Part shown: piece after piece, positions 1-47,183 of the stretch
Position numbering within the stretch: the stretch's first letter is position 1
Layout of the letters: every line of letters starts with the position of its first letter
Assembly: GCA_965637545.1 (NCBI GenBank)
Contig: OZ281497.1
Span: forward strand, 13,206,001 to 13,270,000
Direction: 5' to 3'
Source: Phallusia mammillata
Taxonomy: Eukaryota
Length of the DNA stretch: 64,000 nt
Notes under the pieces: generated by a model
The model's database searches: none
Told to the model about the DNA's origin: nothing
Seen by the model: the letters and a program-made list of their open reading frames with translations, nothing else
Translations under genes and position numbers: made by a program

Positions 1-3000
1 ATGGTCTTCTTCGCATTGTTGCAAAAGAACGTACTGAATTGTATTTGAATTCATATTCGTTTTTTTCCACTTGTTGACGTATACTTTTAACGTTACGTAA
101 ATGGAGTTACATTGGAAGTCAACTTTTTCATGGTTTATCCGTGTTGGTGACGGATGGTGCGAATTTCTCAATTTGTTGATAACATCCATAACGTTTTTAG
201 GTGCTTCTTTATACAATGTCTTGTACACACTCGATAACGTCACCGCTTTGGTACAATCCCCCACCAACAGCTCATCATTGACCAACCTTCGACCAGGGCA
301 GACGTATGATGTAACTGTGGAAGGTGTAACCAGCACCGGACGAGTAATTGGACAATCCAATGTTACACCACTTGGTAAGACAAACCATACTGTTGTTTGC
401 TAGAACAATCATTTTGCTGCAGTAGAGGTTATCCATCTATTTCTTTATCAATAGACATGCTTCCAGCTTTGTTGAACACATCGGTTTCGAACATTACTAA
501 AACAACTGTTGATGTTGAATGGAATCCCCTTCCAGGTTTGTATGCGACAACAAATTGTGCAGCAAATAGCTTCATAAAACCGTCGTAACACATATTACTT
601 TTTTTCGTCTTCAGACACAACTACTTTTGATGTAATCTATGTTGGTCCCGAAACAAACAAGACTGATCGTGTGAACAACATTAGCTCGCTTAATATCGGT
701 CCGTTGATTCCTGGTTCAGAATTTAATGTCACTGTTGTGGGATATGACCAGAACGGTGTGGTGACTGCAAAATCTAAACCAACACCCTTCAAAACTGGTA
801 AGAATCTTTAATCAAAGTTGATGCGCTTCTATTAGCATAAGATTTCTTTTAATAAACTGCTATTATAACAATGATGTTGTGTTCAGATATCCAAATCATC
901 GTTGTTGAATTCACATACGTGGCCTCAACAATAGCAGATGTAATATGGACCAGTGTTCCAGGTAACTTATCTTTCACATGATACTAGATTACATTTGTGT
1001 CTCTGCTTACAAATGTTTATGTGAAAACGAAACAAAATGTAAGGCAAAGATTATTCGTAAAAAACAAATATTTTTGTGAATATTTGAAAGTTTTTTATTC
1101 TTTTGGTCTGGATATTTTTTAAAGAAATGAGTTTATTCTCAGGAGCATCAACGTATAACGTGTCAGCAACTATCGGAAACGTTACTGTCATTACACCATC
1201 CGATACAAATAACGTAACTCTAGTTGAAAAAAGTCCAGGCCAGACATATGAGATTATCGTCACTGCACACACAAGCACTGGGCAGTTGATTGGAAGATCA
1301 AATCGCACTCCTCTAAGTAAATTGCAATTTTGTTGTGCCTAAAATGTGTGCATTGACAGAAGTAATTTATTTTGTGCCTTTTCAGCCATGTCCCATAACT
1401 TGATCACTGTAATGGTTAATAACGTGACCGATTCGACGGCAGATGTCGAGTGGAACAATGTCCCAGGTTAGATTTGCATTTCATTTTTGTGCAAAAAACA
1501 TTGTGACCAACAAGGTTTCAACTTATCTTTAATCCACACTAGGAACGGTTACTGCAAATATCGTCTACAATGGACCAGATGGTACCAATACTCAGAGCGT
1601 CACAACCAACAACAAAACAACAATCAGTGGACTAATTCCAGGGTCCCGATATAATGTCACTATCTTTGCCTTTGACAAAGATAACATACTGATTGGAAAG
1701 TCAGATCCTCGTGTTTTCCCAACAGGTAACAAATATATGCTAAGACTTTTTGCGATTTTGGTATATGACCCACTTTCAAAACTAATGATTGGTGTTTTTT
1801 TCTCGTTTTATAGCCAATCAAACTATCGTGCTAACTTTCGACTTCATTACGTCGACAACTGCAAACGTCACTTGGAGCAATGTTCCTGGTAAGACCATAC
1901 AGTAATGGTCTTCTTCGCATTGTTGCAAAAGAACGTACTGAATTGTATTTGAATTCATATTCGTTTTTTCCACTTGTTGACGTATACTTTTAACGTTTTG
2001 TAAATGGAGTTACATAGCAAGTCAATTTTTCATGGTTGATCCGTGTTGGTGACGGATGGTGCGAATTTCACAATTTGTTGATAACATCCATATCGTTTTT
2101 AGGTGCTTCTTTATACAATGTCTTGTACACACTCGATAACGTCACCGCTTTGGTACAATCCCCCACCAACAGCTCATCATTGACCAACCTTCGACCAGGG
2201 CAGACGTATGATGTAACTGTGGAAGGTGTAACCAGCACCGGACGAGTAATTGGACAATCCAATGTTACACCACTTGGTAAGACAAACCATACTGTTGTTT
2301 GCTAGAACAATCATTTTGCTGCAGTAGAGGTTATCCATCTATTTCTTCTTTATCAATAGACATGCTTCCAGCTTTGTTGAACACATCGGTTTCAAACATT
2401 ACTGACACAACTGTTGATGTTGAATGGAATCCCCTTCCAGGTTTGTATGCGACAACAAATTGTGCAGCAAATAGCTTCATAAAACCGTCGTAACACATAT
2501 TACTTTTTTTCGTCTTCAGACACAACTACTTTTGATGTAATCTATGTTGGTCCCGAAACAAACAAGACTGATCGTGTGAACAACATTAGCTCGCTTAATA
2601 TCGGTCCGTTGATTCCTGGTTCAGAATTTAATGTCACTGTTGTGGGATATGACCAGAACGGTGTGGTGACTGCAAAATCTAAACCAACACCCTTCAAAAC
2701 TGGTAAGAATCTTTAATCAAAGTTGGTGCGCTTCTATTAGCATAAGATTTCTTTTTAATCAACTGCTATTATAACAATGATGTTGTGTTCAGATATCCAA
2801 ATCATCGTTGTTGAATTCACATACGTGGCCTCAACAATAGCAGATGTAATATGGACCAGTGTTCCAGGTAACTTATCTTTCACATGGTTCTAGATTACAT
2901 TTGTGTCTCTGCTTACAAATGTTTATTTTAAAACGAAACAAAATGTAAGGCAAAGATTATTTGCAGAAAACAACAAATATTTTTGTGAATATTTGAAAGT

Positions 3001-3208
3001 TTTGTATTCTTTTGGTCTGGATATTTTTTAAAGAAATGAGTTTATTCTCAGGAGCATCAACGTATAACGTATCAGCAACTATCGGAAACGTTACTGTCAT
3101 TACACCATCCGATACAAATAACGTAACTCTAGTTGAAAAAAGTCCAGGCCAGACATATGAGATTATCGTCACTGCACACACAAGCACTGGGCAGTTGATT
3201 GGAAGATC
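1..3208 (+). repeat. Near-identical tandem duplication, period ~1.9 kb (1-1299 vs 1905-3208), introns included
   Basis: atggtcttcttcgcattgttgcaaaag occurs at 1 and 1905. Only scattered substitutions and small intronic indels up to ggaagatc at 1299/3208. Confidence 0.95.
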
Positions 3209-6200
3209 GTTAGTCACCTCCCTTAGTAAGTTTTGTATGCTTGATATTGTGTTTACTTAGATTAATGCAAACGTTGTTTAGGCATGCTCCCTGATTTGTT
3301 ATCATTGATAATAACCAATGTGACTCATGTCGCGGCTGATGTTGAATGGAATCTGGCTCCAGGTTTGAAATGTTTTCATTTTTGTGATAAAGGATCTTTG
3401 CTTCAAATAATGTAACTTTGTTTTCATGAAACAGGTGCAATTGCGTATGAAGTGGTTTATGTAGGTTCTGCGTTGAGCTCAACCAACGATGTGAAAAACA
3501 CTAACAATACAGTTATCGGTCCATTGGTTCCTGCCTCTCGTTACAGTATCACAGTTAACGCCTATGATGAAACCGGGGTTTTGATTGGAAGATCTCTAAC
3601 TTCTTCGATAACAACTGGTACTGCAAATTGATGTTACACGTTGCTACAATATTTGTTTTCATTTTAAAACGATGGTTAATTTGATTTTAAAACAAATAAC
3701 AATAAAAAAAGGTTTATCTAAAAGTACCAGTTGTCTGTAAATTAAGATAAAACTTTTTTAGCTCAAGTTATTGAACTGAATGTTACCAACATATCTGGAA
3801 CTAAAGCCAAAGTTGATTGGATACCTGTTGATGGTTTGTCTCATTTTGTTTTGTTGTTAGTTCCACTCCATGGTCATATTTTTGATATTTTTATTATTTT
3901 CCTAAGGTGCCATATCATATAACGTCACCCACTTTTCTGCCGGTAAAATGTTGAGCAACTTTTCCGTTCAACCCTTCCTCAATCTTGGCGACCTTATTCC
4001 CAATACAAATTACACCGTGTTTGTTCAAGCTTTTCTAATCAATGGCTCTCTTGTCGCTCAATCTGACCATTCTCCATTCAAAACAGGTACATATTTAAGG
4101 TAAAAACACACAAATCATTGCTGAAGGTTTACTGCCTTTACAGAAGAACTTTCAGTGAATGTCACAGACATTGTGGTGGGACCGCTCACTGCTGAAGTGC
4201 ATTGGGAACCTGTTGAAGGTAGCTACAAGTTTGATTTGTGTTTGTAAGCGATTAATTTTTACATTTGCAACCTTTTGACTTTGACAGGAGCCACTTCATT
4301 TGAGTTCTATCATGAGAATTCAAACACTAGTTTGCCTGGGATCATGAACAGTACAATCGATACGTTCATAGTGTTGGAAGATTTGTCGCCATTAACAACT
4401 TATACATTTACTGTCACTGCTCTTAACAGGAATGAATTGCTACTCGCAAAAACACCGGTCTTAAGCGCCACAACAAGTATGCATTGTATTTAAGAAAGTT
4501 CCTTGGCTTTACTGTAACAGTAAAACTTTTGTTGCTTAGTGCCCGAGCTAGGCGTTCGACCATTATCAGTTTGGTCGAACCCAGTTTCAGCTTCAGTTGT
4601 GTTTATGGCGCTTGATAACAACACAGAGTCTTACCGAGTTTCCATTGCCCCCGTGGCTGATCCAACCAACATTACGGATACCCTTTTTCTCCCTTACGAT
4701 GGAAATCAGGTATACCATTGCTAATAGTTAAACGTTCACTGGTTTTAAACATTTAAACAATTATTTAGAATCACACCGCTACTTTCGTCGGGACGCTGAA
4801 GCCCACAACTGATTATCGCTTTGCAATTAGAACCATTCTTGGTCAAGAAATTGGGCCTCCGGTTTATGCCTACGTTAGGACAAGTCAGTGCTGAATTTTG
4901 ATGTGTGCAGGCATTTGACAACAAGAAATAATTTAATAATTTTTTTTTGCCGTTGCAGAGAAATTTGGGATACCTAAAAACATTACCTTTTCAAACATTA
5001 CCACAACCGGATTTTCGTTGGACTGGCTTGAGGTTTTACATGCTCAGGTATTGTACTTATTTCAAGAGAGTGATTACGTAGATTATTTTGTGTACTTATA
5101 TTTTGAGCAGGGCTACATCATCACTGTGTTTCAAGTTGTTGATCTTCCTCGGACTTTGACAAATAACCAGACCCTTCGAAAAGTATTTTCAACTAATGTC
5201 CCGAATAACACAGCCATTATTAAAAACCTACAACCGGGAAGTTCATTTGTCATTCATCTCCATGCATTTGTCAATGGGCACATTTCACCGGCCACTATCG
5301 TTTCAATTAATACAAGTAAACAAGGCAACACGTCATGTAAACCCCCACAAGTTTTTTGATTTCTTATTAAATTTTTTTTTTGAAAGGACCAAACCCGGTA
5401 GCTGATTTGGTTTTAGACAGTACATCTCCTTCATCCATTACTGTTTTTGTCGAAAAGGCTGAGGGCCCGGTTACCCACTACGAGGTTAAAATTGCCCCCG
5501 TTGAGCAGCCTCTATTGACCCAAGTGAAAAGGGTAATTAAATATGCAATATAACGCTATAAATTAAAGACTTTAAATAAGATGAGTATGTATTATTTCAA
5601 GATTGAAGCCCTTGATGCACAACCATTTGCATCGGTTCAATTCAGCGGTTTAATTCCAGAAACAGAGTATGTAATAACAGCAACAAGCTTTGTTCTCATC
5701 GTAGCAAGTGAACCTTCCAACATCACTGGTACCACCGGTAAATACAAGTCGTATGTTTTTGTTTGTAGTTTTCTTTAAGGTATAGCATTCATACTTCTTT
5801 TACAGATTCCATGCCACTTATCAACGCAACAGTTTTGCGAGATAACAACAGCATACACGTGACCGTCCTGCCTTCTGGTTGGCCGCCTACTTCTTACGTT
5901 GTTCAACTGCAATCATTCCAAGACGAAAATAAAGTCAGTGAACGTAATATCAGTCACATGCCACCCAAGAGCCCAATTGTCTTTTCGGATTTGGTAACTG
6001 GACAAAAGTACAAAGTTTCTGGATTTCTGACTTACGGTGACTTAAACGGGACGCGCAGTAGCATTGGAAATGTAACAATTCGTAAGTAAAATGACTTGTT
6101 TTCTTAAATAGGAGGTGGCAGTAACCATTCCACTGTGAATTACGAATAAATTGTCGTTTTCAGCTCCTTTACCAGTTGTGATTAGGAACATTTTTCCTAC

Positions 6201-27200: not shown

Positions 27201-30200
27201 CTATTCTGTGTCATTGGCAAAAGAAAAACGGCCATCAATAGACATACAAGTACGCTTTTTGTTACAATTTGTTTAAAGAGCGTTTGAATGATATTCTGAG
27301 TTTGTTTCAGATTGGAAGTATTGCGTCAAATGCGACGTCCCCAACTCATATTTTCAATGGCCTTAGTGCTGGAGAAACTTTCAAAGTTACACTTGTACCA
27401 AGTTTTAAAGGCACCAATGGAACTGCAATGAACAAATCAGTCACAACCCGTATGTTTAATTATGATTTTTAGTTTAAATTGTTGTAAAGTAACGCTTTGG
27501 TTTACAGTGGCACCACGATCACCAATAAACGTCACTGCGTCACCGCTACACGAAACAAGTATTATCGTCCAGTGGTCCATTGATCCTGCAGTTACAACAT
27601 ACGAAATATCGACTGAAAATCTTGATCTTCCCAACGCAACAAATGTTACAAACACTATTGATCCAACCATTTTTAAGTACGTTTCTTTTGAGTCATTTAA
27701 ACCTAATAAAGCACCTCACTAACGAATGTTTTTCTATTATAGTGGCATCGTGGTGATAAGTAATCTTGTGCCACGCACTAAATACTCTTTTACCCTCACA
27801 CCAGTTGGTGCTTTGCCCGAAGTCAAGGGTCCCCCGGCTGAAGTCAATGCCACTACAGGTAAGTAAATGGCCATAGGTGCATAACTTTCTTACAAATGAC
27901 AAGTTTTATAAAGGTCATTTAAAATTTTTAGATTCACCTTCTCCAGTCCTCAACATATCCGTAACATTTATCAATGCTACAGCAGTTAACGTGTCAATTA
28001 CACCACCTGTTCGTTATGTGGACAACGTCACTTTGCTTTTGCTTCCGTCGTCACCAGCCGCAGTAAATCCGGTCGCCGAATTAATCATCCCGTATGCCAC
28101 CGTCCATTTCCCTATTATCATCAATAACTTACAGTGCAATTTCACATACAACGTTAGCGTTGTGTCGAAGTTGTTTGGAGTTTCCAGTGATGCTCGATCA
28201 ACTGTCTTTAGCACAGGTAACTAGTGGATAAACTATGTTAGGATTTAAGTGTATATACACCACAGGAACGTGTTGTGTTAATTTTTTGGATTTTTCTTTT
28301 TATTTTGTAGTTTGCTATGACAATTAGAAGAATGTTTACTGTAGACACCTTTAACTTTATTCTTGGTTCAGGTGCTTGTGGAATCCTTCTTCCTCCGCCA
28401 CCACCTCCCCCACCTCCGCCATCTCTTCCACCACTGACATCATCCTTACCAACTATTCCACCTCCCCCAATACCACCTCCTCCTCCAACTCTGCCGCCAA
28501 TCATCCCAACTCGTAAGTTAAAATCATCACAGTATACATCTTCAGTGTTTGAGATCTAAATCAAATGGTCTATTTGTTTTGTAGAACCCTCATTGCCACC
28601 TCCGCCACCACCCTCACCTCCTCCACCGCCACCAATACCCCCGGTTGTTGTGTGAGTATATATGAGACATACATTTTTAGTAAACTAGTATAAGTCAAAT
28701 AAACGCACATCTCATTCATAATAAACAGTGATCCAACCACAACTGCTGAACCAGTTACCACTCCACCTACAAACGAAACAACACCAGTATCGTCAGTGGT
28801 ACCAACCACCCCCATGCCCGTGGTATGGTACGTCGGTTACGCTGTTGTTATTGATGTCGTAAACGTATCAGTATCTGATGTTGTCGACGCCACCAACAAC
28901 TCTGCCCCTGATGCCGTGCGTAAAATGGAGGCGGATTTCAAAACATTTGTAAGTAGTAACTGACAAACTGCATACACATTGGTCGGCTCTTTAATGGTGC
29001 AATTTCGTGTCTTTAAAGGTGGTAACGGAGCACGCTAACCAGTCGGATAGTGGGGACCAGATATCCCAGATTGTGGTGCAGTATTACGAACCGTTGTCTA
29101 ACGGGACGTTTGCCATTCATTTTGCCATCGCCATGGCAGGTAAGTAACAAAATCAGACGGGGGATTACCAATGTCTTTACAGTGGATTATATCCGATGAT
29201 AAATACTACAATCTTGAAAGTTAGGACGAAAGTGTAAAAATCCTATTCTTTACTTCAACGCAGATAATGCACACCCATGCACTGTGGAATACGCGGTAAC
29301 CAAGTCTCTCAATGAAGGAAAACAGCCAACAAACATGGACCTCGAAGAAACGACCTTTCGGGTGTCAGGTTTGTTTCGTTATATAGGTCTCACTTTTCTT
29401 GCACTTTGCTTCAAGGTTTATTTTTGTGTCTAGGAAAAAGGCGATTCCGCGGTGAAGTGACGATGAACGATTTAGGAGCAGGTCTTGTGGCTGATCTAAC
29501 TGCATCTCCGGACGGTTTCCGTGCCTTAATTGAGATTATGGTAACGTTTTTGTTGCATTGTGTAAGCAAGTAAAAAATATGTTACAAGCAATATCCAATA
29601 CCTTAGCTCAACAACGCTGTATCGGAATCTGTACCGGGTCACATCGCTCTTGGGGCTCAATGGAGTTACGCCGGAATGATTCAGATCGAGTCAACAAGCC
29701 TCAAAGCAATTTTTAACATCACTTCCGCCCGTGACGACAGAACAGCAATCCCCAAACGCATTATCAGTTTGTTGCAGGAAGCGTCTGTGCGATACTCCTT
29801 TAACGTTCATCCTTCCAACGTAACAGCCGAGGGTACGATGTCTAACGCCCAAACACATTTCCGCTATATCTGTACTTTATGCTTTTTTTCTGTTATGCAG
29901 CATATGGATTTGTGGGCACACCACTAGCAAACGATCCTTGCCCCAGAACAACAGCCCCGTCGTCTTACAAACATGGTCTCTCGTTTGCACTATCTGTTCC
30001 GCCACCAGATGTGTACAACATTGTGCACAGGCCCAACTCTGACGACTACAAGATGTTTAAGGAAATGACAGACGAACTATTGGCAAATTTGCAAGTTTCT
30101 ATAGTTAACAACACAATCGGCGACTTGAGTTTTGATTACTTCCAAGCCCAAACACCACCTGCTTCCAAGTAAGAACAAGCGTACAAACCGTTTGAATGTA

Positions 30201-33200
30201 CAAATGTTTTTTGTGTTAAACTTTTGGCCTGTTTACGTTGCGTAATATAATCAACGATATTTTACAAGGTCCTCATATGTACGCATTCAAATCATGAGAT
30301 ACAAGCAGTGTTCTGTCATGTTTGAACACAATACAATATACGCATATTTTTTAGTGTGTGGGCTCACTTTACAACCTCAACTGCCAAACCGGATGTTCAA
30401 CATCTGTATCAGCAAATGCAAATCGCCTTTAGCAGCGTCGATACCCATCTTGAACTTCGACCGAACTCACTTCTGTATCCAGGTACGCAATTTTTTTTGC
30501 ACCTGTTGTATCTGTAAACAGATTTTGTATTGGTCACCTTTGGAAAAGATGTTAAAAGGGATCTTCATATGTGTTTAACAGATATAAGAAAAATGATGGG
30601 TGAAATGAAGATTTCCAACTTTTCGGAATCCCTGCTTCAAGGAATAGCTGGAAATAACGAAACTTCTATCAACCGGGCTAAAGGATACGCACTTAGCCTC
30701 ATAGAAGGACTATTGGCTACCACCGGCATTGCCATGATTCCACGAATCAACAAGGTAATAAACGATGTATGGTGTGTTGTACGTTGCATGACTGACATTC
30801 AATAGAACTTTGCAGAAATAATACGATGTAAAGTTTAGCTAGTAACAAGATCATCAACACCACTTCCATTTAGATTGCGTTGGATTCGGAACCAACCCTT
30901 GCAAAAGCGACATTTGATCTTGATCCTTCCGTGCTAAAATCGGTTGCCACACCCAAGTACGTTGCTGACCAACTGAACAAAGCACAAAAAGACACTGACA
31001 ATAGTATTGCCGCAATCATGGGAAGCAAAGTATCATCAGGCTCAGTCCAAGTCTGGCCAATCGGAACTATCTACGGCATGCCATTTGCTGGTAAGTTTCG
31101 GAATTCCGCTCGACTAAAACAACTACCACGGTTCTTTCGTTAATACGATTTTGTATTTCAGGCAAAGTCGTAGTTGGTGGTCTCACACCGGAAAGAATCC
31201 ATGACATAATGTTAAACTCAAACTCAACCGAAGCAGCACATTATAAAGAAAACCTTACACGAACTTTGCAATCAGTCTTGGCTAGCTACTCACAGGCAGA
31301 TGTCTTAGATATACGTAAGAATTTTACACGATATTTATTACTGTTAATTTTGGTAGATCTCAGAAGTCATTGCACTGTTGTTTTTTTAGCTTCCACGTCT
31401 GTCCAGTATTTTGAATCATCATTTAATGCTCCGGACACAGTGGTTGCGCACTTCAAAATGCAAATGAAGAACAACACTTCGCCTGATGATCTTGACATTG
31501 CGCTTTTGACAGATACTATCGGAAATACGTTGACAGGTGGGACATGATCACTTGGTGTGCTTTGTTGTAAACGCCTTGACAAAACAAAACATTCGCTTTG
31601 TTTTTTTTAGCTCCCTACGTTGACACATCTTCCCAAGTTGGCTTCCCGAGACAGTTTAAAGGCACTGGATTGTTACAAATTCAACCCAACGACACGCAAC
31701 TTGAACTGGTTGTCTTTTATAATGTGAGTAAAACCGACTTGACATGAATATGTAATACCAATTTGTATGCTTTATCTTGTGCTTGCCAAACCCGAAATCT
31801 GCATAAATTCACGTAAACTCAATGGTTTATGAACTAAATGAGGTAACCTATCATACCTCAGAGTATTAGTATCATGCCACTAATCAATTTTTTTTACCTT
31901 TCAGTTGGCAAAAGCGTTTAACGCATTGGAAGCATTTTCTGTAAGCCACCTTGACAACGTAACGTTGGTACCGGAACCAAACGTCAGCGATTCACTCCGA
32001 TTCTACTTCCAAGTCACCATGTCCAAGTACGACGTCACTGAACCAGAAAATCTTGAACTCTGGCTCAACTTTGTCCCTACGCCATTCAAGGATCTGAAAA
32101 TATATTGTAAGTTATTTTTATCCGTTTTAACTTAAACGTTTAATTAACCCTCTAAAATGTCTATTTTGTGTTTGTGTACAGTTGACCTACCTCCACTGCC
32201 GAAAGTTAATGGTAAGTACTTACTTGTGTGTTGAGCTAAATGCACTAACATATAACGAATCGTTAAACGTAAACCCATTCGTATTATCGTTCACTTTACA
32301 TAAATATCCAGGATAGTAATAATTTAAAGCGTTTTTTTGCAGTTTACAACGGTGAATTCAGTTTCCCTAACGTGTCTTCATCACTCGACCTGCGCCAAGC
32401 GATGCTCAATAAAACAAGTGGAAGCTTTGTAGAGCAAGCAGACTTTGTACAAAATATCGTAAGTTTTCATACTTTTAACAATGGCCTGTGATAATATTTA
32501 GAAAGTAACATTTTTTTCTTCTGGTGCAGATGTCTGAGGCATTATCGGCATTAGACGACGTCACCATCTCTGTACAATACTTTGCTCCGTTCCTTACGTC
32601 CGGCCTGACTGCCCACGTTGAAGTAAAAACCACAGACACCAACGATACAGTTGATTCCGCTATTAAAGGTTTTGCCACCAATCAAACCAGTCAATTCATG
32701 TAAGTCATAAACCTTCAAGTTTGACAAAACCATCTGCAATTGATCCTGGTGTTTTTTCATTAAATGTTGTTGAATAATCAGGTTGGACCCTGAAACAGTG
32801 AAAATACCAACTCAAAGATCTCTTCTCGGGGAAGTGTTCCTTGGCAACATTTCGGACGCTCAAGTCGACTTCATACTGCAGTACATTAACCCTGTGGCAA
32901 GTGTCGACTACATATCTCTCTCGCGCTCTTTAGCGGATATTTACAACCAAGCTGTCGGCAAAAATGCGATTGTGGATTTGAAAACTTTCGAGTAAGAACT
33001 AAGAATCAAACAGTATAAGCTTGGTTACGTGATATTTAAATGTAAAATTATGATACTGTATAACCCTTAATCTTCTAATTAAGCTCGTTTCCCGATATTA
33101 GTTACTTTTTTGTACACAGCCATTTCCGTACTCGAGAAAACAAGATAAAAGTGTATTTCCGACTCAACCTTGAAACGAACGATCTCGGCGACCCGTTTAC

Positions 33201-36200
33201 GATGACAGACACATTACGATCAGCTCTACAGAAAAACAATACTCGTATGTTGTTCTACATTTGTTCAAGTTTAATGGGAAATATTCTGTTTGATTACCCG
33301 CGATTAACAAATATTTTTATTTAGTGGGAGTCAACGTCGAACCAGCAACGGCCAACATTACGGTGATACTTGATGACCCGCCGCCTAAAATAGGTCTGTT
33401 ACCTTTTGTTTTCAGCAGTTTATTTATTTATTTTTTTGAAAAAGATAAGTCCATAAGATGACTTATTCCTTTACAGCAAAATTCACTGGAGAACTAACCT
33501 TTGCTACAGTACCTTTTGGAATTAGTCAGTACGAAGCGTGCGTTCTGAATGCGAGCAGCAGTTTTGAAAAGATCATAAAAGCTGTTGACAGCATTGTAAG
33601 TGCGAAATGAAACTACAATAAGTTAAACAGCGCAAAAATTGTTGAACATTTTCAGAAATACCATACTTTTTTTAGTTAAATGCCACTGGACATCTACCAA
33701 GTGTTGAATTCTTCCAATTCGAGAGTCAGTATTTCGCTCCGTATGAACACTTCGGATTGGTCGCGCACTTTGTGCTCACAACAGATTTTAACAATACGTC
33801 AGAACTTGAGGCGCTAATAGAAAATCAATCAACAACATTAAACTCGTAAGTGTTGATTTGTAGAAAACGGAATAAATTGTAAGCCTGCTAATAAACCAAA
33901 ACATTTTGAAGGAGGAATTTAATGCCATCGTCGGTTGCCATACCAACCAAGCGTCGCTTCTACTTCGAGGCTGAAATTGACGGACTTGCCCATTCTGAAA
34001 AACAACTTCTTCTGGATGAAAATAGTGCCTTCTTTGACAATGCTAAGCAAAGCGTCGAAGCGCAGTTGGCCAGTGAATTCCAAATATATCCCGAAGTTCA
34101 ACTTAACAGGTACTCGTTCGTCAAACATAAGTCACGTTTCAATTTCGGTTTGTTCTTGTTGAAAAGCAAACTATGGAGGTCTAATTATCTTGTCTTTTTG
34201 TTTTTTAACAAAAATACTTAGTAGTTAAGTCACCAAATTAATACTGATGTACAAAATGTTATGCGTTTATGCAGATTTGAGCAATACGGCATGAACTCCA
34301 TAAGAATGATTGTTAACCTCACGATGTCAGATAACCTCTTGTACGATCCATTCGTTCTGACAGCAGAAGTTCGAAACTCGCCCAGTCCATTAGTGATAAA
34401 TGGTATGTACGCTTGCAAACAATGTTTGTCATAGAGAAGCAACGATTTGTGTATTAACCTGGTGTTGTTTTGACTTAGTTGAGGGAAGTTCCAGCTCTGG
34501 ATCAATTAACAACATTTTTGACCTTATTTCGAAACCCGTACTGGCAACTATGAGTTTGAACCGGACTTCAGCCAACGTCACCACCTACATTTATCCACCA
34601 GGTAATTTTGCTTACATCAATAAAGTAACATCACGGGACTGTGCGCTTCATTGCTAAAAATTAAAACTATCATGGTAAGATGGTGGTTTATTTTGCGTTT
34701 TTTTTTACCTTATTTTGAGGGACGTTTAGTCAAATGTGGTAATCGTGGCCTTAATTAATTTACGAATTTTGCCTTCACAGAATACGCTTCCTTTATTGGA
34801 TTGGTGCATGTTGTTGGACCTTCCGACCCGGCAGATCGTGCCGCCCTACTCGATCCGTTCACAGATAGCTTGGTGAAAAACGAAACAAACGAAAATCTGA
34901 CAAACGCAATCGTCGATCAGTTTAATACGTACATCCCAAGCAAAGTTGACATCCAGTATTACCAACCATTGCTCAATTCTTCTGTAGTCGCTCATTTCAA
35001 GGTATGATATGTTGTAGGTGTGCAAATACATACGCTTGATCCAGGAATATGGAAAACATACTGATGTTCAATGATATTTTGTTCGTCAATGATATTGTGA
35101 ATAGAATTATCACGTGTCATGCAAAATATGAAAAAACTGTATTACAAACTTCATAAGCGCATCTCAAATTTTAGCTAACCTTCCCGAATGGGACTGACTC
35201 TGCAAACATTTTGGATGAACTAAAGAATTGGACTCAACCGACAACCGAGCCAAGTGGGGTAGTTGTAGATCCGAACACAGTAGACTTAGGACCACATATT
35301 GTAAGAGAATTTATGGGAGAAGTTAACTTTACCAAACCAAGCTTGAGTAATCTGACGACCAACGACGAATTCGAGTTCACCAAACTGGTATGTTAGAAAT
35401 TGGTGCGCATTTTACCTCAATTAAAAATAGAAATATTTACAAATTTATTCTGCTCAGTTTAACGACTCGTTCAACGGCAACACAACGAGAGCTACACCTC
35501 GGTTTGACGAGTTCATACCACTGATAGAAGGACCCAGCGGCAACCGCACAACTGAACCAGAGGGTCCCTTGTCACAAGCTCGGGTAATACATGTGTTTTA
35601 AAATCCCAGATTAGTTTTAATAAAAGTGTGTAACAATGGTACATTCGTTAATCTACAGCCACAAATTTAACTGATGACGTGTTACAGGTAAAAATCACAG
35701 CGGAACCAGGTGAAGACTTAACCCCAATCACTTTGACAGACGAAGCAAGACAGTTTGCAAGCGAGGAAGGCCAACAACCATTTATCAAAAAATATGGTTC
35801 CAAACCTACTTTTATAGTTGTTAAAGGTGTGTAGACGCACTTAAATGTATATTTAGGAATCAATCATTGAGCAATGAACGGCAAGATTTATTTGTTTTAG
35901 CGCTTGAGCCGACCGCTGAACTGCCACCAAACACCACGCAGTCACCCAACGTCACGCAGTCACCCAACGTTACACAGACACCCAACGTCACAACAGCGGC
36001 TCCTAAGCCGACTCTCAGAACCGTGAAGGCTGTGTTGTTGAATGTTCCACTTGATGAAGTAATCGGACTTTATGAACCAACCGACCCGGCTACCCTCGGC
36101 TTTTACGTCGATCAGGTACGAAGTATTTTACTAACCCATAAGTTGTGGGCACAAGACATCAACTTTGTTTTTTATAAGGTTCTTAAGCCATTAAACGAGT

Positions 36201-39200
36201 CGCTACCCAACGCTGAAGAATGGCGTCCAACAGTCCAATATTTTGAGCAAAGACCTGATCAATCAGTGTTTGCTCATTTGGTTTTCAATCAACCTATCAA
36301 CGACAGCAAAAACGCAACCGAATTGGAGGCCGACATGAACTCGTCAATCGTTGATCCAACTAATGTCGACGGTTTTACCGTTGGAGGTATTTTTTAAAAC
36401 CGCTTACTAAAATATTTCTATCATTAGCACAATTTGATTTGTTATTCAATTTTTCGTTCTTTACTCCTGATTTGTGTGTTTAGACACTCGCGAGTTTGCG
36501 GGATCTGTTGAATTATTTGTGGATCAGAAGACCAAACAAGACTTACTTACCAATGATACAGCTGCGGATGCGGCTCTAGCCGAGCTAGCTGATGTGGTGA
36601 GGCATTTTAGTCTTTTTGTGTGTCAGCAATAATGTGTGAATCAAGTAAAATCTGCAAACCAGTTAAACAGCCACAAAGTTCTAAACCGAGTATCTAGTGA
36701 AACAAATATTTCAAATATTTCAGGCAAACGGAATTGTAAAAAACTGTGCAGGTGTGAGACCATTGGCTTTTAAAATCAAATGACACACAGTAAAGGGGGG
36801 TATATAAGTCAAACAAAAATTTGTGAAAAAGTAGTAGTCGATGTGTACCTAAGATCTCTTGATGTTCTTTATTCTTGCATAAAGCTTTTTCTTTGTACCC
36901 AGCTCACTTCAACTCTTCCTGTCTCCAACATCACTAAACCTATAGTGGAAGACGTTGGCCCCGACCTTGTCCGTCTCAACTTCACTGTCGTGTCACAACC
37001 TGATGTTCCAAATTTGGCCCCAGAACTACAAAAAGACGGTATTGCAAAACTTCAAACACAGAAAGAATTCAGCAATTTCGCTATCCGCCCTGACACGTTA
37101 ATAGTGAAAGGTAAAGTTGACCGTGCACGTGTTTGTTTGGTTTTTGTGTAATATTTCTTACTTGTGTCTACAGTTCCCGGACCCTTCTTACCAACAGGCG
37201 AAGGTGGAACAATAGGTACGTTTCTTAATTTGGAGAGTTTTATGACTAACATTGAGTAAACTGAACCTCAGTGTGTATTCATCTAAATAGTAGTAATTTA
37301 CATACGTTGTTTGAACAAAATTATCTTTCTAATATCCCTTGTTTGTACTGTGCTTTTTGAAACATTGCTTTAAGCTACATGGACAGTTATTGAGGAATGT
37401 TTGCTTTTAGACAATTTGAGCACCGTCCTGACCGTTTTTTTATTTCAAGACACTAGATTTCCTTAATATTGCGTTTGAGTGGTACGACAAGCAATAAACT
37501 GTATCGATATATCACCTATTTTTATGTTTTACAGTTGCAAAGGCCTTTATTGCATCATTTATGATTCATAACAAAACGTACGCGGACATCAAGGATATGT
37601 GGTTAAACAGAACATCAACACCTGCTGAAGTTGCGATAGCTCATTACAAACCAATGGTGTGAAACTAATACTTAAACCTTATAATATAAAAACAGCCATT
37701 AGCAAAGTGTTTTAATTTGATATTTTTTTTCAGCTTGATCAAGTGCCTTTCAAGATTTCAGTGGATTATTTTGAACCCTGGGAACCAAATACTGTCAAAG
37801 TGCAAATTTTTGTCAATGGTATGAATTCTGAAACTTTGGTTATACGATTTCATTTAAAATTGTAACAACAAAGGTTTGCGTTCTAAGCAGCGCAAGCAAG
37901 TTTAATTCTGTACCCATAAATTCATTGTCGGCTGAGTTTTACCAACGATTTATTGTTAACTGTTTTTTTTTGCAGTCACTGTCCCTGCTTCAGACGTCGA
38001 GGTTTACAACATATTCATGGCTGCAGGAAATAAAACAAACACTTCAATGTCAAATCTTACAATGGCTGTTAAACGTAATTTCGCGGCTCACATGGATGTC
38101 ACTTCCAACGACACTGATCAAGTAATCGTTGATAAGGTACGATTAGACTTTCTCGCAGAACCAATTCAGATAGAAAAAAATGAATACATATCTTTTTCAC
38201 CAGTATTTGGAGTGTTTTTTATTAGTAGCAATTGCATAGGATTTTTTTAGAATCGTTTCTGAAATTCTAACATCGTAAAACTTATGCTTTTCAATCCTGT
38301 ATGTATCGGAGCCAGAACTTACTGGGGTTCTTTCGTGTCGTTATTACAGATCCAAAACATCCTTGGCAATGAAACGAATGCTACTTTGTTTAACAACAAC
38401 GACGCCCCTGATTACAAGTACTGGAAAAATGAGATTGACTTAATGACTGCAACGCAATCAGATGTGCCTACAGGAAGCGGTGAGGGTTTTGAATATTTTG
38501 GCATATATTTGATTCAAAATAAAATTGTCGACAAATAGACAGGGATTCTGCTCAGAATGGTGTTTAATTACACAATAATGCTTTATTTTTCAGCGACTCG
38601 TCGAAAACGGGAAACCCCCCGAACCATGCAAATCCGCCTTGAAACGGCAGCAAACCAACGATCAAATCCAAATATGCTTTATAACGCTATATACGGCGCA
38701 GTGAACGAGACTGGTCTTCAAGTATACGGTAAGTGGGAAAATGTTTGTTTTCTTTGCTGCCAATTAAAATAGCCATGTGTACCCAGAAACATAAAACTGT
38801 TGTCAAAGGCGTACGGAGTTCAGTTTGTGGCGTACGCGTAAAATCTGTTGTACAATGTAAAAACAAGATTCGTTTGCTCACAGTCATTCCACCGCTTCCC
38901 ATTCGTTCAACATCGGAACCCCTGACAACTACAACACCAGTGACAACCACAGCACCGGCAGTGGTTACAGGCCCCATTTACCCAGTCGTGGTGATAATAA
39001 ACTTGGACAACAGAACCATCACAGATGACGTCCTGGTGTACGTGCTACGTAAAGTACTGGAAAAAGTAAGTTCTGATCTGATGCGCAGTGAGACTAGTGT
39101 TTTGTGAATCTTGTTATTGCATAAAACATTTTATTATTTTTGTATGTGTTTCGTACAGTTGAAGGAAACACTGGACTTGAACAATCGTAATGTATCGATA

Positions 39201-41627
39201 AGTAATACAAGAGCAGTGATGCACAACGATACTGATGACCCCAGAAAGAAGAACCTAGCAAAGGTAGAACAAAGAATTTTTTTTGCTACAAAATTAGATT
39301 TGACGGGTATGGGGAAGTTAAATCATCCTGCCATCTGTCGAAAAATGTTCGATGAATCAATAATATTAATTAGCTCTACGATCTCTGGCTAACTACCTGC
39401 TGAAGCCCATAATGGGTATGTCCTGCAGGGACCGCTTATTGCAGTAGTTGGTGGATTTCATTCATTTTATGATTATAAATGTTTAGTAATTAATCTTCGT
39501 TAATTTAACTTCAAAGAAGTTAAACCAGGTGTGTCCAATTCGAAAATACCGCCGTGCTAATTCTGGTTTTAAAATAGACTCGCATGCCGATAATCTTGTC
39601 TCAAACGGTTTGGACTTAATCCGAATATTTGGCCATTTTGTAGAACCCTTAAATATTTAGAAAAAAAACATGTCGTCAAAAACGAGTAAACTTGTTTATG
39701 GTACTCCAGAAACCTTTTATTCCGTTTATGCGGCAAAAAATACTAATAGTTTGTAACGGGGCTTATGTTTGAATTTTATTAGTGGGTTGTGTAACTTTAT
39801 TCCTGCAAGATAATCTTTACCTAAGTGAGAATATGGGCCATGAACAATCAACAGAAAAAAATTAATTGCGTGACCTAAGTCCTAATGTTGCCAATCTGAA
39901 TTTTTGCAAAAGCTCTTGTGCCATTTTTAAATGCTCTGCGTGCCACATTTGGCACGTGTTTGACACCCCCGAGTTAAACTGTGAAGGGTTTGTTATCGCA
40001 TTGGCCTATAGTTTATTTATATCGCTATGTATAACCTAATATCGCCGAATCATGGAGATATTGACTGTATGCAGTTATAATATCCGGAAGATATTAGGGT
40101 TTGGTAAAAGTGACAATTCGCAAACCTTGCACAATCAATGTTTTAGTAAATGACGTCATGAAAGTTATAACTTTAACTGTTTAGGTTACATTTGACATGA
40201 AAATCTACAACTCATCCGAACCAAAAGCAAAAGAGATTGAAAAAGAAATAAGAACTTCGTTTGAGAATGACCCAACACTAACTGATCTCAATGGAGCAAC
40301 TATTGAACCGGAGAAAACTTTCATCGGAGGTAAACACGAAGCCCAAATCGTTCTTTTCCGCTAAACAACTTGACAAAGTGCAATTCAGGAAATTTAACAA
40401 GAGGAGTTTCCATATAGTTTCTATATAGGCGTGTATTTTATCATTTGTTTATAGACCCACAAACTTGTATAAAAGTATATTAGTCTGTTTTAAATGATTT
40501 CACCGAACACCAAAAGTATATTCTTTCTACAGAATATGACAAATGCAAGGATGCTTTTGTGGAAGATTGCCATCCCAATGCCGAATGTCTGCCCACTGCT
40601 ATTTCAAACAACTTTACGTGCAGATGTTACGACGGATATATAGACAGAAACACAAGCTATCCCGGCAGACAATGCGAAAGAGCACGTAAGTTAAAAATGC
40701 ATTTGAAGTACATGGGCTTCTTTTTAAACGTTGATCGCTTTAAGTTTATTTATTTATTTAGTTTTTCTATTAAACGTTGATGCATATAACAAACCAACAC
40801 TTTTTAAAAGCTGTGAATCGACCAGGATCTAACTCGAAATTACTGTAAGACTTTTTTAATGTGTCATTATCGCCAAACACGTACATAAAATGATAGGCGA
40901 CCTGCAGTGCTTGAACGATGTAATTCTTACGCTTTCCTAAACAGTTAAAACAGTTCAGATTTGAAACGCTTTACTATTATTTTGTTAGAGTGACTGAAAT
41001 TTAAATATGAAACATTGATACGTAATTCAGCATTTATTTTTGTACTTTGATTGTAGCATTATATATCGTCATTGTTTCAATGTTCTTAGCAAAGTTAATT
41101 CAAAAATATTAAAAAAAAACAAATAATTCAAAAACATCGCATATGTTTTTGCAGCTGCTCCTTTGGCACTTTCGGAAACAACATTTGTGGTAATTCTTAT
41201 CATTCTCGCATCGTTGATGATGGTCGTCATCGGTGTTTTGGCTTACATGGTTTACATGAAGACTGTTGGGTATGTCTTTGCTTTTTTGCTGCTGTTTTAA
41301 TAATGGATGCCCTAACACAGGGGTCGGCAACCTTCTTTGCACTGCGGACCGGTTTTGAAAGTAAAATTTTATCGCGGACCAGTCTTCAAAAAATTACAAA
41401 TATTTAGCAATGAAAACGCCTAAATTAGTTTATCATTCCCGGGATATATGGGCAAAATGCTTCATAGCATTTATCCTGGAAGATTATGCGACCCGGTAAC
41501 GAACTCCTCGCGGACCGGTACCGGGCCGCGGACCGGCGGTTGCCGACCACTGCCCTAACAAACCATTGTGTTTTGCAGACAAGGGGCGTACAGTCCGAAA
41601 GCTGAGGAAGGAGTCAATTCTGTCTAA
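201..41627 (+). CDS. Giant multi-exon type I membrane protein, 5'-truncated by the window: FN3 x~60, polyPro, SEA-like x~16-17, EGF, TM, short tail. Roughly 8000 aa encoded in the window (estimate).
   Basis: Phase-compatible GT-AG exon chain checked at many junctions, e.g. 201-374, 455-535, 615-797, 887-961, 1143-1316 ... 40185-40329, 40533-40685, 41155-41269, 41579-41627 (TAA). No start codon or signal peptide lies in the window. Confidence 0.85.
3760..11900 (+). repeat. Older 10-FN3-domain super-repeat, two copies, period ~4.1 kb
   Basis: Colinear paralogous exons, e.g. VPELGVRPLSVWSNPVSASVVFMALDNNTESY (4541) vs VSELGVKPTSVWSNPVSASVVFMALDNNTESY (8638), and DSKPVTVLP... (6582 vs 10774). Introns are diverged. 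Confidence 0.9.
24330..27860 (+). repeat. 4-FN3-domain super-repeat, ~2.25 copies, period ~1.6 kb
   Basis: DPVFSPVSVNVTSGLTDANVTIQPSPSNVDSY (24744) vs DPVFSPVGVNVTSGLTDANVTIQPSPSNVDSY (26354). A third partial copy starts at ~27509 (VAPRSPINVTASPLHETS). Confidence 0.9.
28372..28651 (+). other. Two polyproline exons (28372-28512, 28585-28651) of the giant gene
   Basis: GACGILLPPPPPPPPPPSLPPLTSSLPTIPPPPIPPPPPTLPPIIPT / QPSLPPPPPPSPPPPPPIPPVV, in phase with flanking exons. Confidence 0.85.
35930..35995 (+). repeat. Coding 18-bp tandem repeat (TQSPNV x~3), mucin-like linker
   Basis: acgcagtcacccaacgtc-type units encode NTTQSPNVTQSPNVTQTPNVTT. Confidence 0.85.
39526..39971. mobile_element. hAT-type MITE (446 bp), intronic
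   Basis: Ends CAGGTGTGTCCAA...TTGACACCCCCG with a perfect 8-bp TSD AGTTAAAC (39518-39525, 39972-39979). Internally homologous to 61827-62296. Confidence 0.85.
40533..40685 (+). other. EGF-like domain exon
   Basis: EYDKCKDAFVEDCHPNAECLPTAISNNFTCRCYDGYIDRNTSYPGRQCERA: six Cys in EGF spacing. Confidence 0.9.
41155..41627 (+). other. Transmembrane exon (41155-41269) and terminal cytoplasmic exon (41579-41627)
   Basis: FVVILIILASLMMVVIGVLAYMVYM then KTVG|QGAYSPKAEEGVNSV*. The phase-2 junction is consistent. Confidence 0.88.
41318..41552. mobile_element. hAT-type MITE (235 bp) in the last intron
   Basis: TIR CAGGGGTCGGCAACC / GGTTGCCGACCACTG (14/15 match) with a perfect 8-bp TSD CCCTAACA. Confidence 0.92.
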
Positions 41628-42919
41628 ATTTTACTGTTTAAACTTATAAATTCGTTTTATACCAGTAGTGATAGTATTTTAAAATGCCTTAAATTTTATT
41701 TTATCGTAAATTCGCATAATATATAGTAGTTAATATAATCGTAAAATTTTGGTAATATTGATAATATAATAAACAAATTAAATAAACCGCCGTGTGTTTT
41801 GTTACGATTTGCCGGGAATTTTGAGTTTAAAATCACAGAACGTGTCTCAGTGTTTTGTATAGTTTTAGGTACCCTGCAATTAAATGACCTGGAAAGCTAC
41901 GATCAGTCTGATGGCGTCGTTATTTGTAGGGCAACTTGAGTTAAGCAGGATATTAAAATTTAAATAGGATGTCATTTCAGCTTTAGTCAATCATCAGTCA
42001 ATCATTAAAACAAGAATTGTACTATATAACAACAACCGTGGGACGTGCGAAAATATACAAATTTTATTTTCCTCTTCAAAACAAATACACAAAACTTGTT
42101 TGGCCCCTGTGAAAATAATACTAAATAGCCTACCTGTCATACGCCGATTTCCAAAATCTATTTAAGAGAGATATTAGCAACGTTGTATTAATCGAATGTG
42201 TACACAGTGTTAAAAACTGCATAGTGCAGTGCTCTTAATAGTTTAATTAAGTTCCTGGGTTGCAGTGTAATGAAGCGCAGTTTACACTTTGAACAAGCTC
42301 GAACTAAGCTTATACCGCCATCGTCACTATGAGTTTCTTCGGCTAGCTTATCGAAAAAAATGGAAATAACTTTTGTACAATGTAAACAGAAAATAACTAA
42401 AACAACCTTTCCCTTTGACACTTGTTCATCTTTTTCACAACCACAGAATCTCATATGGCAAGAACAACGATCAGACAAAACAAATATGCAGGATATCTCA
42501 CTTGGTTAGAGATGAGGTTAGAGATGTCCGATACGTAGTCAGAACAGGTGTTGTTAATTTTTTATGCCTGAACAGTTTTACAAAAACAGTCGCGGAAGTT
42601 TCAGTTTTAGGAGGTAAAAGTTTTAGGAGGGAACCAGCAAACATTTCCATACAGTTCTTCAACCAAGCAAAAAAATGTAGAGTTTTAACTTTCAGTCATC
42701 CGACTTGGTAAACGATAATATATCTATGCAATAAAGGATATTTCGAAAAAAAGATCGAGATAAAAGACAAACTAGGTTTCAGTCGTGCGTAAGTTTTCAA
42801 TGCAAAAACAAAGCATTTTAATCGCCAGCTGTGGCTGCTCTTGTATAAGATAAAATTTAACACAACGCTGCAGTATGTTTAGCTAAGAAATAAAAAAATA
42901 CTGCTGACTCATAATAACG

Positions 42920-46907: not shown

Positions 46908-47183
46908 AGTGAACATGTGATGTTTGCATTTTTGTGTACAGCTCTGTGTTGCTTGAATAGTTGCGTGCAGAAGCATTCTAAGCTTTCGTAGGGAGCTAGT
47001 CAATAACGTTGATGAAAATAAAAGAAATGGTGTCTGCCTGTCTGCCCAGCGGCTTAGCAATATGTCACAGGAAATTAAATGTATTGTACAGAAAAAAATC
47101 AAACGCATTTTCAATTTCAATTCTATGTGTTGTTTTTGTTTGTTTCTATTCAGAACTTTTTTCGTGTTACTGCACTAGGAATA

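What the first reader, a model, noticed from the sequence alone, without database searches (positions are those of the whole stretch)
201..41627. Giant FN3-stalk / SEA-array / EGF-TM surface protein with no catalytic tail
Seen: one colinear exon chain of ~60 FN3 domains (more upstream), polyPro, ~16-17 SEA-like modules, EGF, TM and a ~19-aa tail. Known: SEA-EGF-TM endings typify membrane mucins (MUC3/12/13/17), and long FN3 arrays typify R3 receptor phosphatases (PTPRB/PTPRJ/PTPRQ) and usherin. I do not recognise this combination at this scale. Inference: a rigid, heavily N-glycosylated tether possibly >200 nm long that replaces the O-glycosylated mucin stalk with folded FN3s, acting in glycocalyx, mucus-net, adhesion or mechanosensing roles.
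Basis: partly seen in the sequence, partly recalled or inferred. Interest (0 to 1): 0.8.

Follow-up and report, generated by a model that had tools for sequence, protein, structure and literature searches.

The report
Giant sea-squirt FN3/SEA-like surface protein
A sea squirt has one expressed gene for a huge cell-surface protein (61 FN3 beads, a proline rod, 17 small SEA-like modules, an EGF unit, one membrane anchor, a 20-residue tail); I found no description of this build, and its relative in another sea squirt carries a classic mucin stretch at the matching spot.

Summary
A splice-aware model gives one + strand chain of 153 GT-AG exons (201-41627), 7,841 codons, and it runs off the window's 5' end. 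It encodes 61 FN3 domains, a ~62-aa polyproline rod and a 30-aa Pro/Thr stretch. Then come eight alternating A/B module pairs, one terminal module, a six-Cys EGF, a TM helix and a 20-aa tail ending at TAA 41625-41627.

Spliced RNA contigs from three studies reproduce 15 listed exon junctions exactly. One 7.7-kb contig joins the last FN3 exon, the polyPro exons and the module array; the DNA run is unspliced.

Of 1.84 billion representative proteins, only four exon fragments, all from ascidian-type DNA, match. The Clavelina lepadiformis locus is collinear (modules, EGF, TM) and has a Ser/Thr-rich mucin repeat where this species has 30 residues. So this is a membrane-mucin-like family in sea squirts, here with an FN3 stalk. 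Function is untested.

The scan had already noted the A/B repeat on this same stretch (s1-361609), not on other DNA.

The parts
201..28216 (+). FN3 array: 107 exons encoding 61 FN3 domains (model aa 1-~5597). Most domains are split into two exons, and most domain-boundary introns are phase 1. The array continues upstream of the window.
   Evidence: Gene model; self-HMM 58 hits plus 3 divergent units; Pfam fn3 32.6/35.0/30.5 bits; 226 NxS/T sequons
28372..28651 (+). Two polyproline exons (28372-28512, 28585-28651). The Pro rod is codons 28386-28643.
   Evidence: Sequence; RNA joints 28512/28585 and 28651/28729 in three RNA runs, absent in DNA run X9
28730..28819 (+). Short Pro/Thr/Ser stretch (30 aa) in the same exon as the start of module A1. 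This is the position of the long mucin-type tandem repeat in Clavelina.
   Evidence: comparison with L005:1-1221
28787..38897 (+). Eight alternating A/B module pairs (~110-130 aa each). A modules carry the [QD]Y[FY]xP...AH motif. A: 28787-29438, 29924-30586, 31045-31654, 32103-32815, 33366-33951, 34580-35294, 35990-36382, 37101-38073. The B modules lie between them.
38599..38610 (+). RRKR, the only R-x-[KR]-R site in the 7,841 aa. It sits just before the strand of module B8 that aligns with strand 3 of the other B modules. Candidate proprotein-convertase site.
   Evidence: regex; B alignment; Clavelina has HRRR at the aligned place. Cleavage is inferred, not shown.
38884..40329 (+). Terminal module T in three exons (38884-39065, 39159-39263, 40185-40329), preceded by a Thr/Pro linker.
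   Evidence: Frame-compatible exons; conserved in L001 and L005. Not covered by the one read-laying run.
40533..40685 (+). EGF-like exon (six Cys, codons 40544-40675), phase 1-1.
   Evidence: Pfam EGF_3 E 5e-4, 20.7 bits, below the 28.5 cut-off; orthologous exons L005:14925-15200 and L001:1616-1807 score 18.7 and 19.9 bits
41155..41269 (+). Transmembrane exon; 24-residue hydrophobic helix at 41184-41255.
   Evidence: Sequence; equivalent exon in Clavelina L005:15432-15572
41579..41627 (+). Last coding exon. The 20-aa cytoplasmic tail (41256-41624 across the intron) ends at TAA 41625-41627. Poly(A) signals lie at 41768 and 41777.
   Evidence: RNA contig lengths imply ends at ~41741-41783 under this model.

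Best explanation
This is the 3' 41 kb of one expressed sea-squirt gene for a giant type-I membrane glycoprotein.

Shown: the protein has at least 61 tandem FN3 domains, a polyproline spacer and a short Pro/Thr stretch. These are followed by 17 compact modules (8 A/B pairs plus a terminal one), one EGF-like domain, one TM helix and a 20-residue tail with no enzyme domain.

Inferred: the modules are highly diverged SEA-type (ferredoxin-like beta-alpha-beta-beta-alpha-beta) domains. The gene would then belong to an ascidian family built like SEA-type membrane mucins, closest in plan to MUC16 (a SEA array, a TM and a short tail) and to MUC3/12/13/17 (SEA and EGF next to the TM).

Proposed working, not tested: the short tail and TM merely anchor the protein. 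A convertase cut at RRKR inside the penultimate module may turn it into a two-chain protein held together by that module, as SEA autoproteolysis or Notch S1 cleavage do. The module array could act as a series of force-unfoldable buffers. The polyPro rod and the N-glycan-covered FN3 chain, roughly 200 nm or more if extended, would project from the apical surface as a steric barrier or as a tether to overlying matrix (tunic or mucus). In this species folded, N-glycosylated FN3s do the job that an O-glycosylated PTS stalk does in ordinary mucins.
For: - Single gene: 153 frame-consistent GT-AG exons with one stop.
- Splicing: 15 listed GT..AG joints in RNA runs X1, X2 and X11 (three studies) fall exactly on the model's exon borders. 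None is seen in DNA run X9.
- Bridging contig: X2 record 6 (7,732 nt) covers exon 27930-28213, then 211 nt, which equals the end of that exon plus both polyPro exons, then module A1 onward.
- Transcript end: contig lengths put the ends ~113-156 nt past the stop, at the poly(A) signals.
- FN3.
- Sequon enrichment.
- Mucin kinship: the Clavelina lepadiformis locus L005 is collinear from A1 to the TM. It has a Ser/Thr-rich 24-aa tandem repeat in the same exon as A1.
- No catalytic tail.
- Literature: MUC16 is described as the only mucin with multiple SEA domains (PMC1552070). SEA acts as a force-sensitive module, and SEA-type membrane mucins are said to have emerged in vertebrates (PMC9578598).
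Against: - No Pfam SEA hit at E up to 10 for any of 17 module pieces, and the PDB sequence profile search found nothing.
- The fold model is weak: pLDDT 61.8, it includes 21 intron-encoded residues, and strand 4 is not formed.
- Foldseek found nothing significant.
- There is no G-S-V-V-V-type autoproteolysis motif.
- The A, B and T profiles are not detectably related to each other.
- This species' PTS stretch is only 30 aa, so by the usual definition (a PTS domain plus SEA or VWD, PMC1552070) it is not a mucin.
- The N-terminus, and so any signal peptide or other domains, lies outside the window.
- Tissue, localisation and cleavage are unknown.
- A single RRKR in 7,841 aa is not far above chance (about 0.3 expected).
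Confidence: 0.62

Rival explanations
1. The 17 modules are a lineage-specific alpha/beta repeat unrelated to SEA. The protein is then a giant FN3 adhesion or matrix tether, comparable in role to nematode myotactin or to usherin/PTPRQ-type links, and its likeness to mucins is only superficial.
For: No sequence signal for SEA. Structural matches tie with unrelated ferredoxin-like folds. A, B and T are not inter-related by profile comparison. There is no autoproteolysis motif. The only relatives are ascidian fragments.
Against: SEA domains are the top two of 48,161 chains and are the only extracellular, juxtamembrane family among the high matches. The modules lie where SEA lies in mucins: after a PTS region and before EGF and TM. 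The Clavelina counterpart has a true PTS tandem repeat fused to A1.
Confidence: 0.25
2. There are two or more transcription units: a secreted FN3 protein and a separate module-EGF-TM protein, joined only in rare read-through or by contig chimerism.
For: Logan contigs cannot prove a single molecule. In X1 and X11 the contigs break near the polyPro exons.
Against: One X2 contig crosses the junction with exactly the predicted exon lengths. The gaps between the last FN3 exon, the polyPro exons and A1 are only 155, 72 and 77 bp, all spliced GT..AG, which leaves no room for a terminator and a promoter. The polyPro exons have no start codon context or signal peptide. The frame is continuous.
Confidence: 0.06
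3. It is a derivative of an R3-type receptor tyrosine phosphatase (an FN3 array plus a TM) that lost its phosphatase. It would act as a decoy or co-receptor rather than as a structural surface coat.
For: Weak Pfam hits to Dep-1 (PTPRJ) FN3 sub-families: E 0.0014-0.18, all below cut-off. The same genome has receptor families with phosphatase or short-tail variants (earlier notes s1-392393, not tested here).
Against: R3 phosphatases have no module array, polyPro rod or EGF between FN3s and the TM. There are no phosphatase exons before the next gene. Clavelina keeps the same short ending.
Confidence: 0.04

Closest known systems
MUC16 (CA125), vertebrate membrane mucin
   Same: A very large type-I surface protein with a tandem array of SEA-type modules next to a single TM and a short, enzyme-free cytoplasmic tail. 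MUC16 is reported as the only mucin with multiple SEA domains (PMC1552070). Most of its SEA copies also lack the autoproteolysis motif (my own knowledge).
   Different: MUC16's distal part is an O-glycosylated PTS region, not FN3s. It has no EGF and no polyPro rod, and its SEA copies are recognisable by Pfam. Here the modules come as two alternating, mutually unrecognisable types, and no sequence homology is detectable.
MUC3/MUC12/MUC13/MUC17 (SEA-type membrane mucins)
   Same: PTS, then SEA and EGF-like domain(s), then a TM and a cytoplasmic tail. The Clavelina counterpart has the PTS tandem repeat.
   Different: [quoted passage not shown] Here there are 17 modules, no cleavage motif, one EGF, a tail ending N-S-V (not class I), and a stalk of FN3 in this species.
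R3 receptor tyrosine phosphatases (PTPRB, PTPRJ, PTPRQ and others) and usherin
   Same: Long uninterrupted FN3 arrays on a single-pass membrane protein, heavily N-glycosylated.
   Different: They have at most ~17-35 FN3s, placed next to the TM, with a phosphatase domain or a PDZ-binding tail. Here there are at least 61 FN3s, separated from the membrane by ~2,200 aa of other modules, and no enzyme.
[quoted passage not shown] 2007, as summarised in PMC4948705)
   Same: Repeated SEA modules in a mucin-type protein outside mammals.
   Different: Those are secreted and alternate SEA with PTS. Here the modules abut each other, and the protein is membrane-anchored with an FN3 stalk.
C. elegans epidermal attachment proteins LET-805/myotactin (FN3 array plus TM) and MUA-3/MUP-4 (EGF repeats, SEA, TM). 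From my own knowledge, not checked in papers here.
   Same: They use the same domain kinds (a long FN3 array; SEA and EGF beside the TM) in giant tethers between epidermis and overlying matrix.
   Different: The domain kinds sit on separate proteins, and long cytoplasmic tails link to intermediate filaments. Here everything is on one chain with a 20-aa tail.

Membership tests
Fibronectin type III domain (Pfam PF00041) | Match to the family HMM above the gathering score | tested here: met
   32.6, 35.0 and 30.5 bits against a cut-off of 25 for three single-exon units. Other units score 14.5-20 bits. 58 units are linked by a self-trained HMM.
SEA domain (Pfam PF01390) | Sequence match to the family HMM | tested here: not met
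   No SEA hit at E up to 1 or 10 for module ORFs and 17 module pieces. A profile against PDB sequences found only Fetuin-B at E 1.2.
SEA domain (Pfam PF01390) | beta-alpha-beta-beta-alpha-beta sandwich fold of ~110-120 aa | tested here: inconclusive
SEA domain (Pfam PF01390) | G/S-V-V-V autoproteolysis motif between strands 2 and 3 (present in many but not all SEA domains) | tested here: not met
   There is no GS[VI][VI] in the module region. A modules have [QD]Y[FY]xP...V.AH there, and B8 has RRKR there.
SEA-type membrane mucins (MUC1, MUC3/12/13/17, MUC16) | Long PTS (Pro/Thr/Ser) O-glycosylation domain | tested here: not met
   This species has only 30 aa (28730-28819). The Clavelina counterpart does have one: a 72-bp unit x8.5, 43% S+T over the 340 aa analysed, running off the locus.
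SEA-type membrane mucins (MUC1, MUC3/12/13/17, MUC16) | Single TM and a cytoplasmic tail without enzyme; class I PDZ motif in the MUC3 cluster | tested here: inconclusive
   The TM and a 20-aa tail are present. The C-terminus N-S-V is not a class I PDZ motif (sequence).
EGF-like domain | Six-cysteine pattern and an HMM match | tested here: inconclusive
   Six Cys are conserved in three species. Pfam EGF_3 scores 20.7, 18.7 and 19.9 bits, all below the 28.5 cut-off; EGF scores 18.2 against 21.5.
R3 receptor tyrosine phosphatases | Intracellular PTP catalytic domain | tested here: not met
   The stop comes 20 aa after the TM, poly(A) signals lie 140-150 nt later, and the next + strand gene is V-ATPase subunit B from ~43377.
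Usherin | N-terminal LamG-like/LamNT, laminin-EGF and LamG domains among the FN3s; PDZ-binding tail | not testable with these tools
   None of these occurs in the 7,841 aa seen, but the N-terminal part of the gene lies outside the window.

The most novel reading that the evidence does not exclude
Sea squirts have their own family of membrane mucins with SEA-type arrays. That would move the origin of SEA-type membrane mucins, currently placed in vertebrates (PMC9578598), back to the common ancestor of tunicates and vertebrates. Within this family, one lineage swapped or extended the O-glycosylated PTS stalk with more than 60 folded, N-glycosylated FN3 domains and a polyproline rod. That would be a natural experiment in how to build a glycocalyx stalk of 200 nm or more.
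Probability: 0.3. Interest if true: 0.7.

Novelty: new variant of a known kind. Interest (0 to 1): 0.55.

Why it matters
Every domain kind here is familiar, but I found the combination and its scale in no paper searched: at least 61 FN3s, a polyPro rod, 17 SEA-like modules, an EGF, a TM and a minimal tail. I also found it in no protein among 1.84 billion representatives.

Public annotation of the Clavelina counterpart breaks it into ~100-aa 'unnamed protein products'. Such giant genes are therefore invisible to routine comparative work.

If the modules are true SEA domains, tunicates have multi-SEA membrane-mucin-like proteins. That bears on when membrane mucins arose. The contrast between a PTS stalk in Clavelina and an FN3 stalk here gives a testable case of interchangeable stalk designs for cell-surface barriers or epidermis-tunic tethers.

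If they are not SEA, it is still one of the largest FN3 proteins known, and it carries a new juxtamembrane repeat family.

Tried and rejected
- A retrained splice model with a light intron penalty over-split exons into 194 pieces with many micro-exons. I rejected it in favour of the penalised model plus three exons restored on domain and orthologue evidence.
They keep the frame, but I saw no counterpart in Clavelina. The RNA contig lengths fit the model without them but cannot exclude them.
- Exon 107-156 was rejected because its copy at 2011-2060 is intronic.
- The word-index protein search with an alignment of 12 FN3 exons scored 608 candidates and gave no hit.
- Two metagenome scans with A2 and A1 patterns gave no confirmed locus. 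What lies upstream of the mucin exon in other ascidians therefore stayed out of reach.
- L006 (P0005's contig) has long introns and reaches only A6-A7.
- Alignments that included first-half module fragments misaligned them onto the second half, so those rows were dropped before folding.
- Profile comparisons A vs B, T vs A and T vs B were not significant.
- I did not type spliced module sequences into any tool, so B and T modules and an intron-free A module were not folded or scanned.
- Pei & Grishin 2017 on divergent SEA domains (PMC5326570) is not held.
Full report
**What is in the sequence**

The window has 34-44% G+C and no N. On the + strand from the window start to ~41.6 kb there are scores of short open stretches with FN3-like sequence. 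Nothing comparable lies on the - strand.

I built a dynamic-programming exon-chain finder using codon log-odds, splice-site matrices and an intron-length prior. Its first pass already gave one chain ending at 41627. The introns are tiny, with a mode of 60-80 bp, a clear GTAAGT-type donor and a pyrimidine-rich acceptor.

A retrained model with too light an intron penalty over-split exons. The penalised version gave 151 exons.

Three exons were restored on independent grounds:
- 18229-18354 is the missing second half of an FN3.
- 39159-39263 and 40533-40685 are frame-neutral and have counterparts in other ascidians.

The final model has 153 exons (201-41627), all GT-AG, with a median intron of 75 bp. 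It has 7,841 codons and a single terminal TAA. The exon at 201-374 is the second half of an FN3. Comparison with the 97.7% identical tandem copy at 1905-3208 shows that its first half lies upstream of the window, so the gene is 5'-incomplete here.

**Domain content**

FN3 array:
- Pfam fn3 passes its gathering score on three single-exon units and gives weaker hits on others.
- An HMM trained on these units finds 58 copies. Three ~95-aa intervals between hits hold divergent FN3-like units, making 61 in 107 exons.
- The FN3 part has 226 N-x-S/T sequons, 4.1 per 100 residues against 1.5 expected from composition, and almost no cysteine.

Linker:
- After the last FN3 come two polyproline exons (codons 28386-28643) and a 30-aa Pro/Thr/Ser stretch.

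Module array:
- The next ~1,900 residues are eight alternating pairs of two module types. Type A has the [QD]Y[FY]xP...AH signature that another first-stage note on this stretch described (s1-361609). Type B lies in between.
- Each type is recovered eight times by its own HMM at E of 1e-22 or better.

C-terminal end:
- A Thr/Pro linker and a terminal module T follow, then a six-Cys EGF-like exon, a 24-residue hydrophobic helix and a 20-residue tail.
- The tail has no PDZ class I ending and no enzyme domain.
- Poly(A) signals lie 140-150 nt after the stop.
- The next + strand gene, a V-ATPase B subunit, begins at ~43377.

**Is it one transcript?**

For 27900-33800, runs from three studies hold about half of the sampled 31-mers, as expected for spliced RNA. 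Two runs of a fourth study hold nearly all of them, as expected for genomic DNA.

I laid four runs on 26900-32800:
- RNA-type runs X1, X2 and X11 each show GT..AG joints at 28512/28585, 28651/28729, 28948/29019 and twelve more listed positions. All are identical to the model's exon borders. Eight further joints were not printed.
- DNA run X9 gives one unspliced 9.6-kb contig.
- X2 record 6 (7,732 nt) carries exon 27930-28213 at record positions 6831-7114 and exon 28729-28948 at 6400-6619. The 211 nt between them equal the last 3 nt of the FN3 exon plus the 141- and 67-nt polyPro exons.
- That contig continues 618 nt into upstream FN3 exons and 6.4 kb downstream.

With the final model, the contig ends fall 113-156 nt past the stop, at the poly(A) signals. 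This is consistent with the transcript ending there. Still, two genes would need a terminator and a promoter inside introns of 155, 72 or 77 bp.

**Are the modules SEA domains?**

At sequence level, no:
- No Pfam SEA hit at lenient thresholds.
- Nothing among PDB sequences.
- The A, B and T profiles are not detectably related to each other.

At fold level, the result is modest. Only module A7 can be referenced without a stop, because its internal 63-bp intron is in frame. I folded that read-through with an alignment of paralogous and orthologous pieces.
- The model is weak (pLDDT 61.8). It shows the order strand, long helix (with the intron-encoded insert), strand, strand, helix; the last strand is unformed.
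- Foldseek found nothing significant. MUC16 SEA5 had the best TM-score, at 0.40.
- These are tied within one Z unit with PheRS and MscS-type ferredoxin-like domains.

The fold class (ferredoxin-like alpha/beta sandwich) is reasonably indicated. SEA is the best and the only extracellular candidate. Membership is not demonstrated.

The canonical G/SVVV self-cleavage motif is absent. The only R-x-[KR]-R site of the whole protein, RRKR at 38599-38610, sits in B8 just before the strand that aligns with strand 3 of the other B modules. This is where I take the strand 2-3 cleavage loop to lie, if B modules share the layout modelled for A7. Clavelina has HRRR at the aligned place. That suggests convertase processing into a two-chain form, but it is an inference; about 0.3 such sites are expected by chance.

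**Relatives**

- A7 searched against 1.84 billion representative proteins gave five hits. One is a spurious bacterial repeat protein. Four are single-exon fragments of 73-99 aa.
- One fragment is an 'unnamed protein product' of the ascidian Clavelina lepadiformis (CAK8681583.1). The others come from JGI and ENA assemblies.
- The Clavelina locus L005 is collinear with this gene from A1 through A8, by tblastn at 23-60% identity. It continues with B8, T, an EGF exon and a TM exon.
- There the exon that begins module A1 is preceded, in the same open frame, by at least 340 residues of Ser/Thr-rich sequence. This includes a 72-bp unit repeated 8.5 times, 43% S+T, and it runs off the locus. That is a textbook mucin PTS domain at the place where this species has 30 residues preceded by polyPro and FN3s.
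- I could not fetch what lies further upstream in Clavelina, so 'replacement' of the stalk remains open.
- A JGI contig (L001), whose A7 and T modules are 42-45% identical to this gene's, has a T-like module and an EGF exon directly upstream of its A7-like module. Module order therefore varies in the family.

**Comparison with known systems**

- A 2006 mucin survey describes MUC16 as the only mucin with multiple SEA domains (PMC1552070).
- Xenopus has secreted proteins with alternating SEA and PTS domains (PMC4948705).
- SEA-type membrane mucins are stated to have emerged in vertebrates, and SEA is regarded as a force-sensitive module (PMC9578598).
- Searches combining SEA domain with ascidian, tunicate, Ciona, FN3 or mucin returned nothing describing such a protein.
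- The nearest plan is MUC16 (a module array, a TM and a short tail), with the SEA-EGF-TM ending of MUC3/12/13/17 and the FN3 stalk of R3 phosphatases or usherin.
- It fails membership tests for mucins (no long PTS in this species), for R3 phosphatases (no PTP domain) and, at sequence level, for SEA.

**Mechanism and verdict**

Shown: one expressed gene for a giant single-pass surface glycoprotein with this architecture, conserved in its C-terminal half in another ascidian order.

Inferred, at about 0.6 overall: a mucin-like apical surface filament anchored by a passive tail. It would have a juxtamembrane array of SEA-type buffers, possibly convertase-nicked, and a stiff, N-glycan-coated FN3 and polyPro stalk. 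At about 3.5 nm per FN3 the stalk would reach ~200 nm if extended. It would serve as a barrier or as a tether to tunic or mucus.

I rate it a new variant of a known kind, of moderate interest. Interest would be higher if SEA homology and the stalk swap are confirmed.

Noticed in passing
window 47079-48737 (+): An intron-free 552-aa ORF is a full glycoside hydrolase family 30 protein, glucosylceramidase-like (Pfam Glyco_hydro_30 E 1.3e-144 plus the C-terminal sandwich). It stands in a genome whose other genes here are cut into ~150-bp exons. It may be a retrogene or a horizontally acquired gene.
   Followed up: partly
window 43377-~45000 (+): A V-type ATPase subunit B gene (ATP-synt_ab_N and ATP-synt_ab hits) starts ~1.7 kb after the giant gene's stop, on the same strand.
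   Followed up: partly
window 1-1299 vs 1905-3208: A 1.9-kb unit of four FN3 domains is tandemly duplicated at 97.7% identity including introns. This is a very recent duplication, or a possible source of assembly collapse or expansion.
   Followed up: partly
window 6561-6854 vs 10753-11046: One divergent FN3-like exon is 96.3% identical between two copies of a ~4-kb super-repeat whose neighbouring exons and introns (4372-6087 vs 8466-10203) are ~66% identical. This agrees with the first-stage note on exon-limited homogenisation (s1-361608) and suggests gene conversion or strong constraint on this one domain.
   Followed up: partly
L001:463-2644 (JGI metagenome contig, ascidian-like host DNA): A terminal-type module plus an EGF exon lies directly upstream of the A7-like module, with no TM exon between them. 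In that species the family member has an internal EGF or a different module order.
   Followed up: partly
L005 (Clavelina lepadiformis CAUIVY010000067.1:5531761-5552937): The public annotation splits the orthologous giant gene into separate 76-121-aa 'unnamed protein products'. At least one of them (P0003) includes intron-encoded residues.
   Followed up: partly
window 19330-20784 and 39264-40184: Two unusually long introns (1,455 and 921 bp, against a median of 75 bp) hold no FN3 or module exon. I did not check them for transposon remnants.
   Followed up: no
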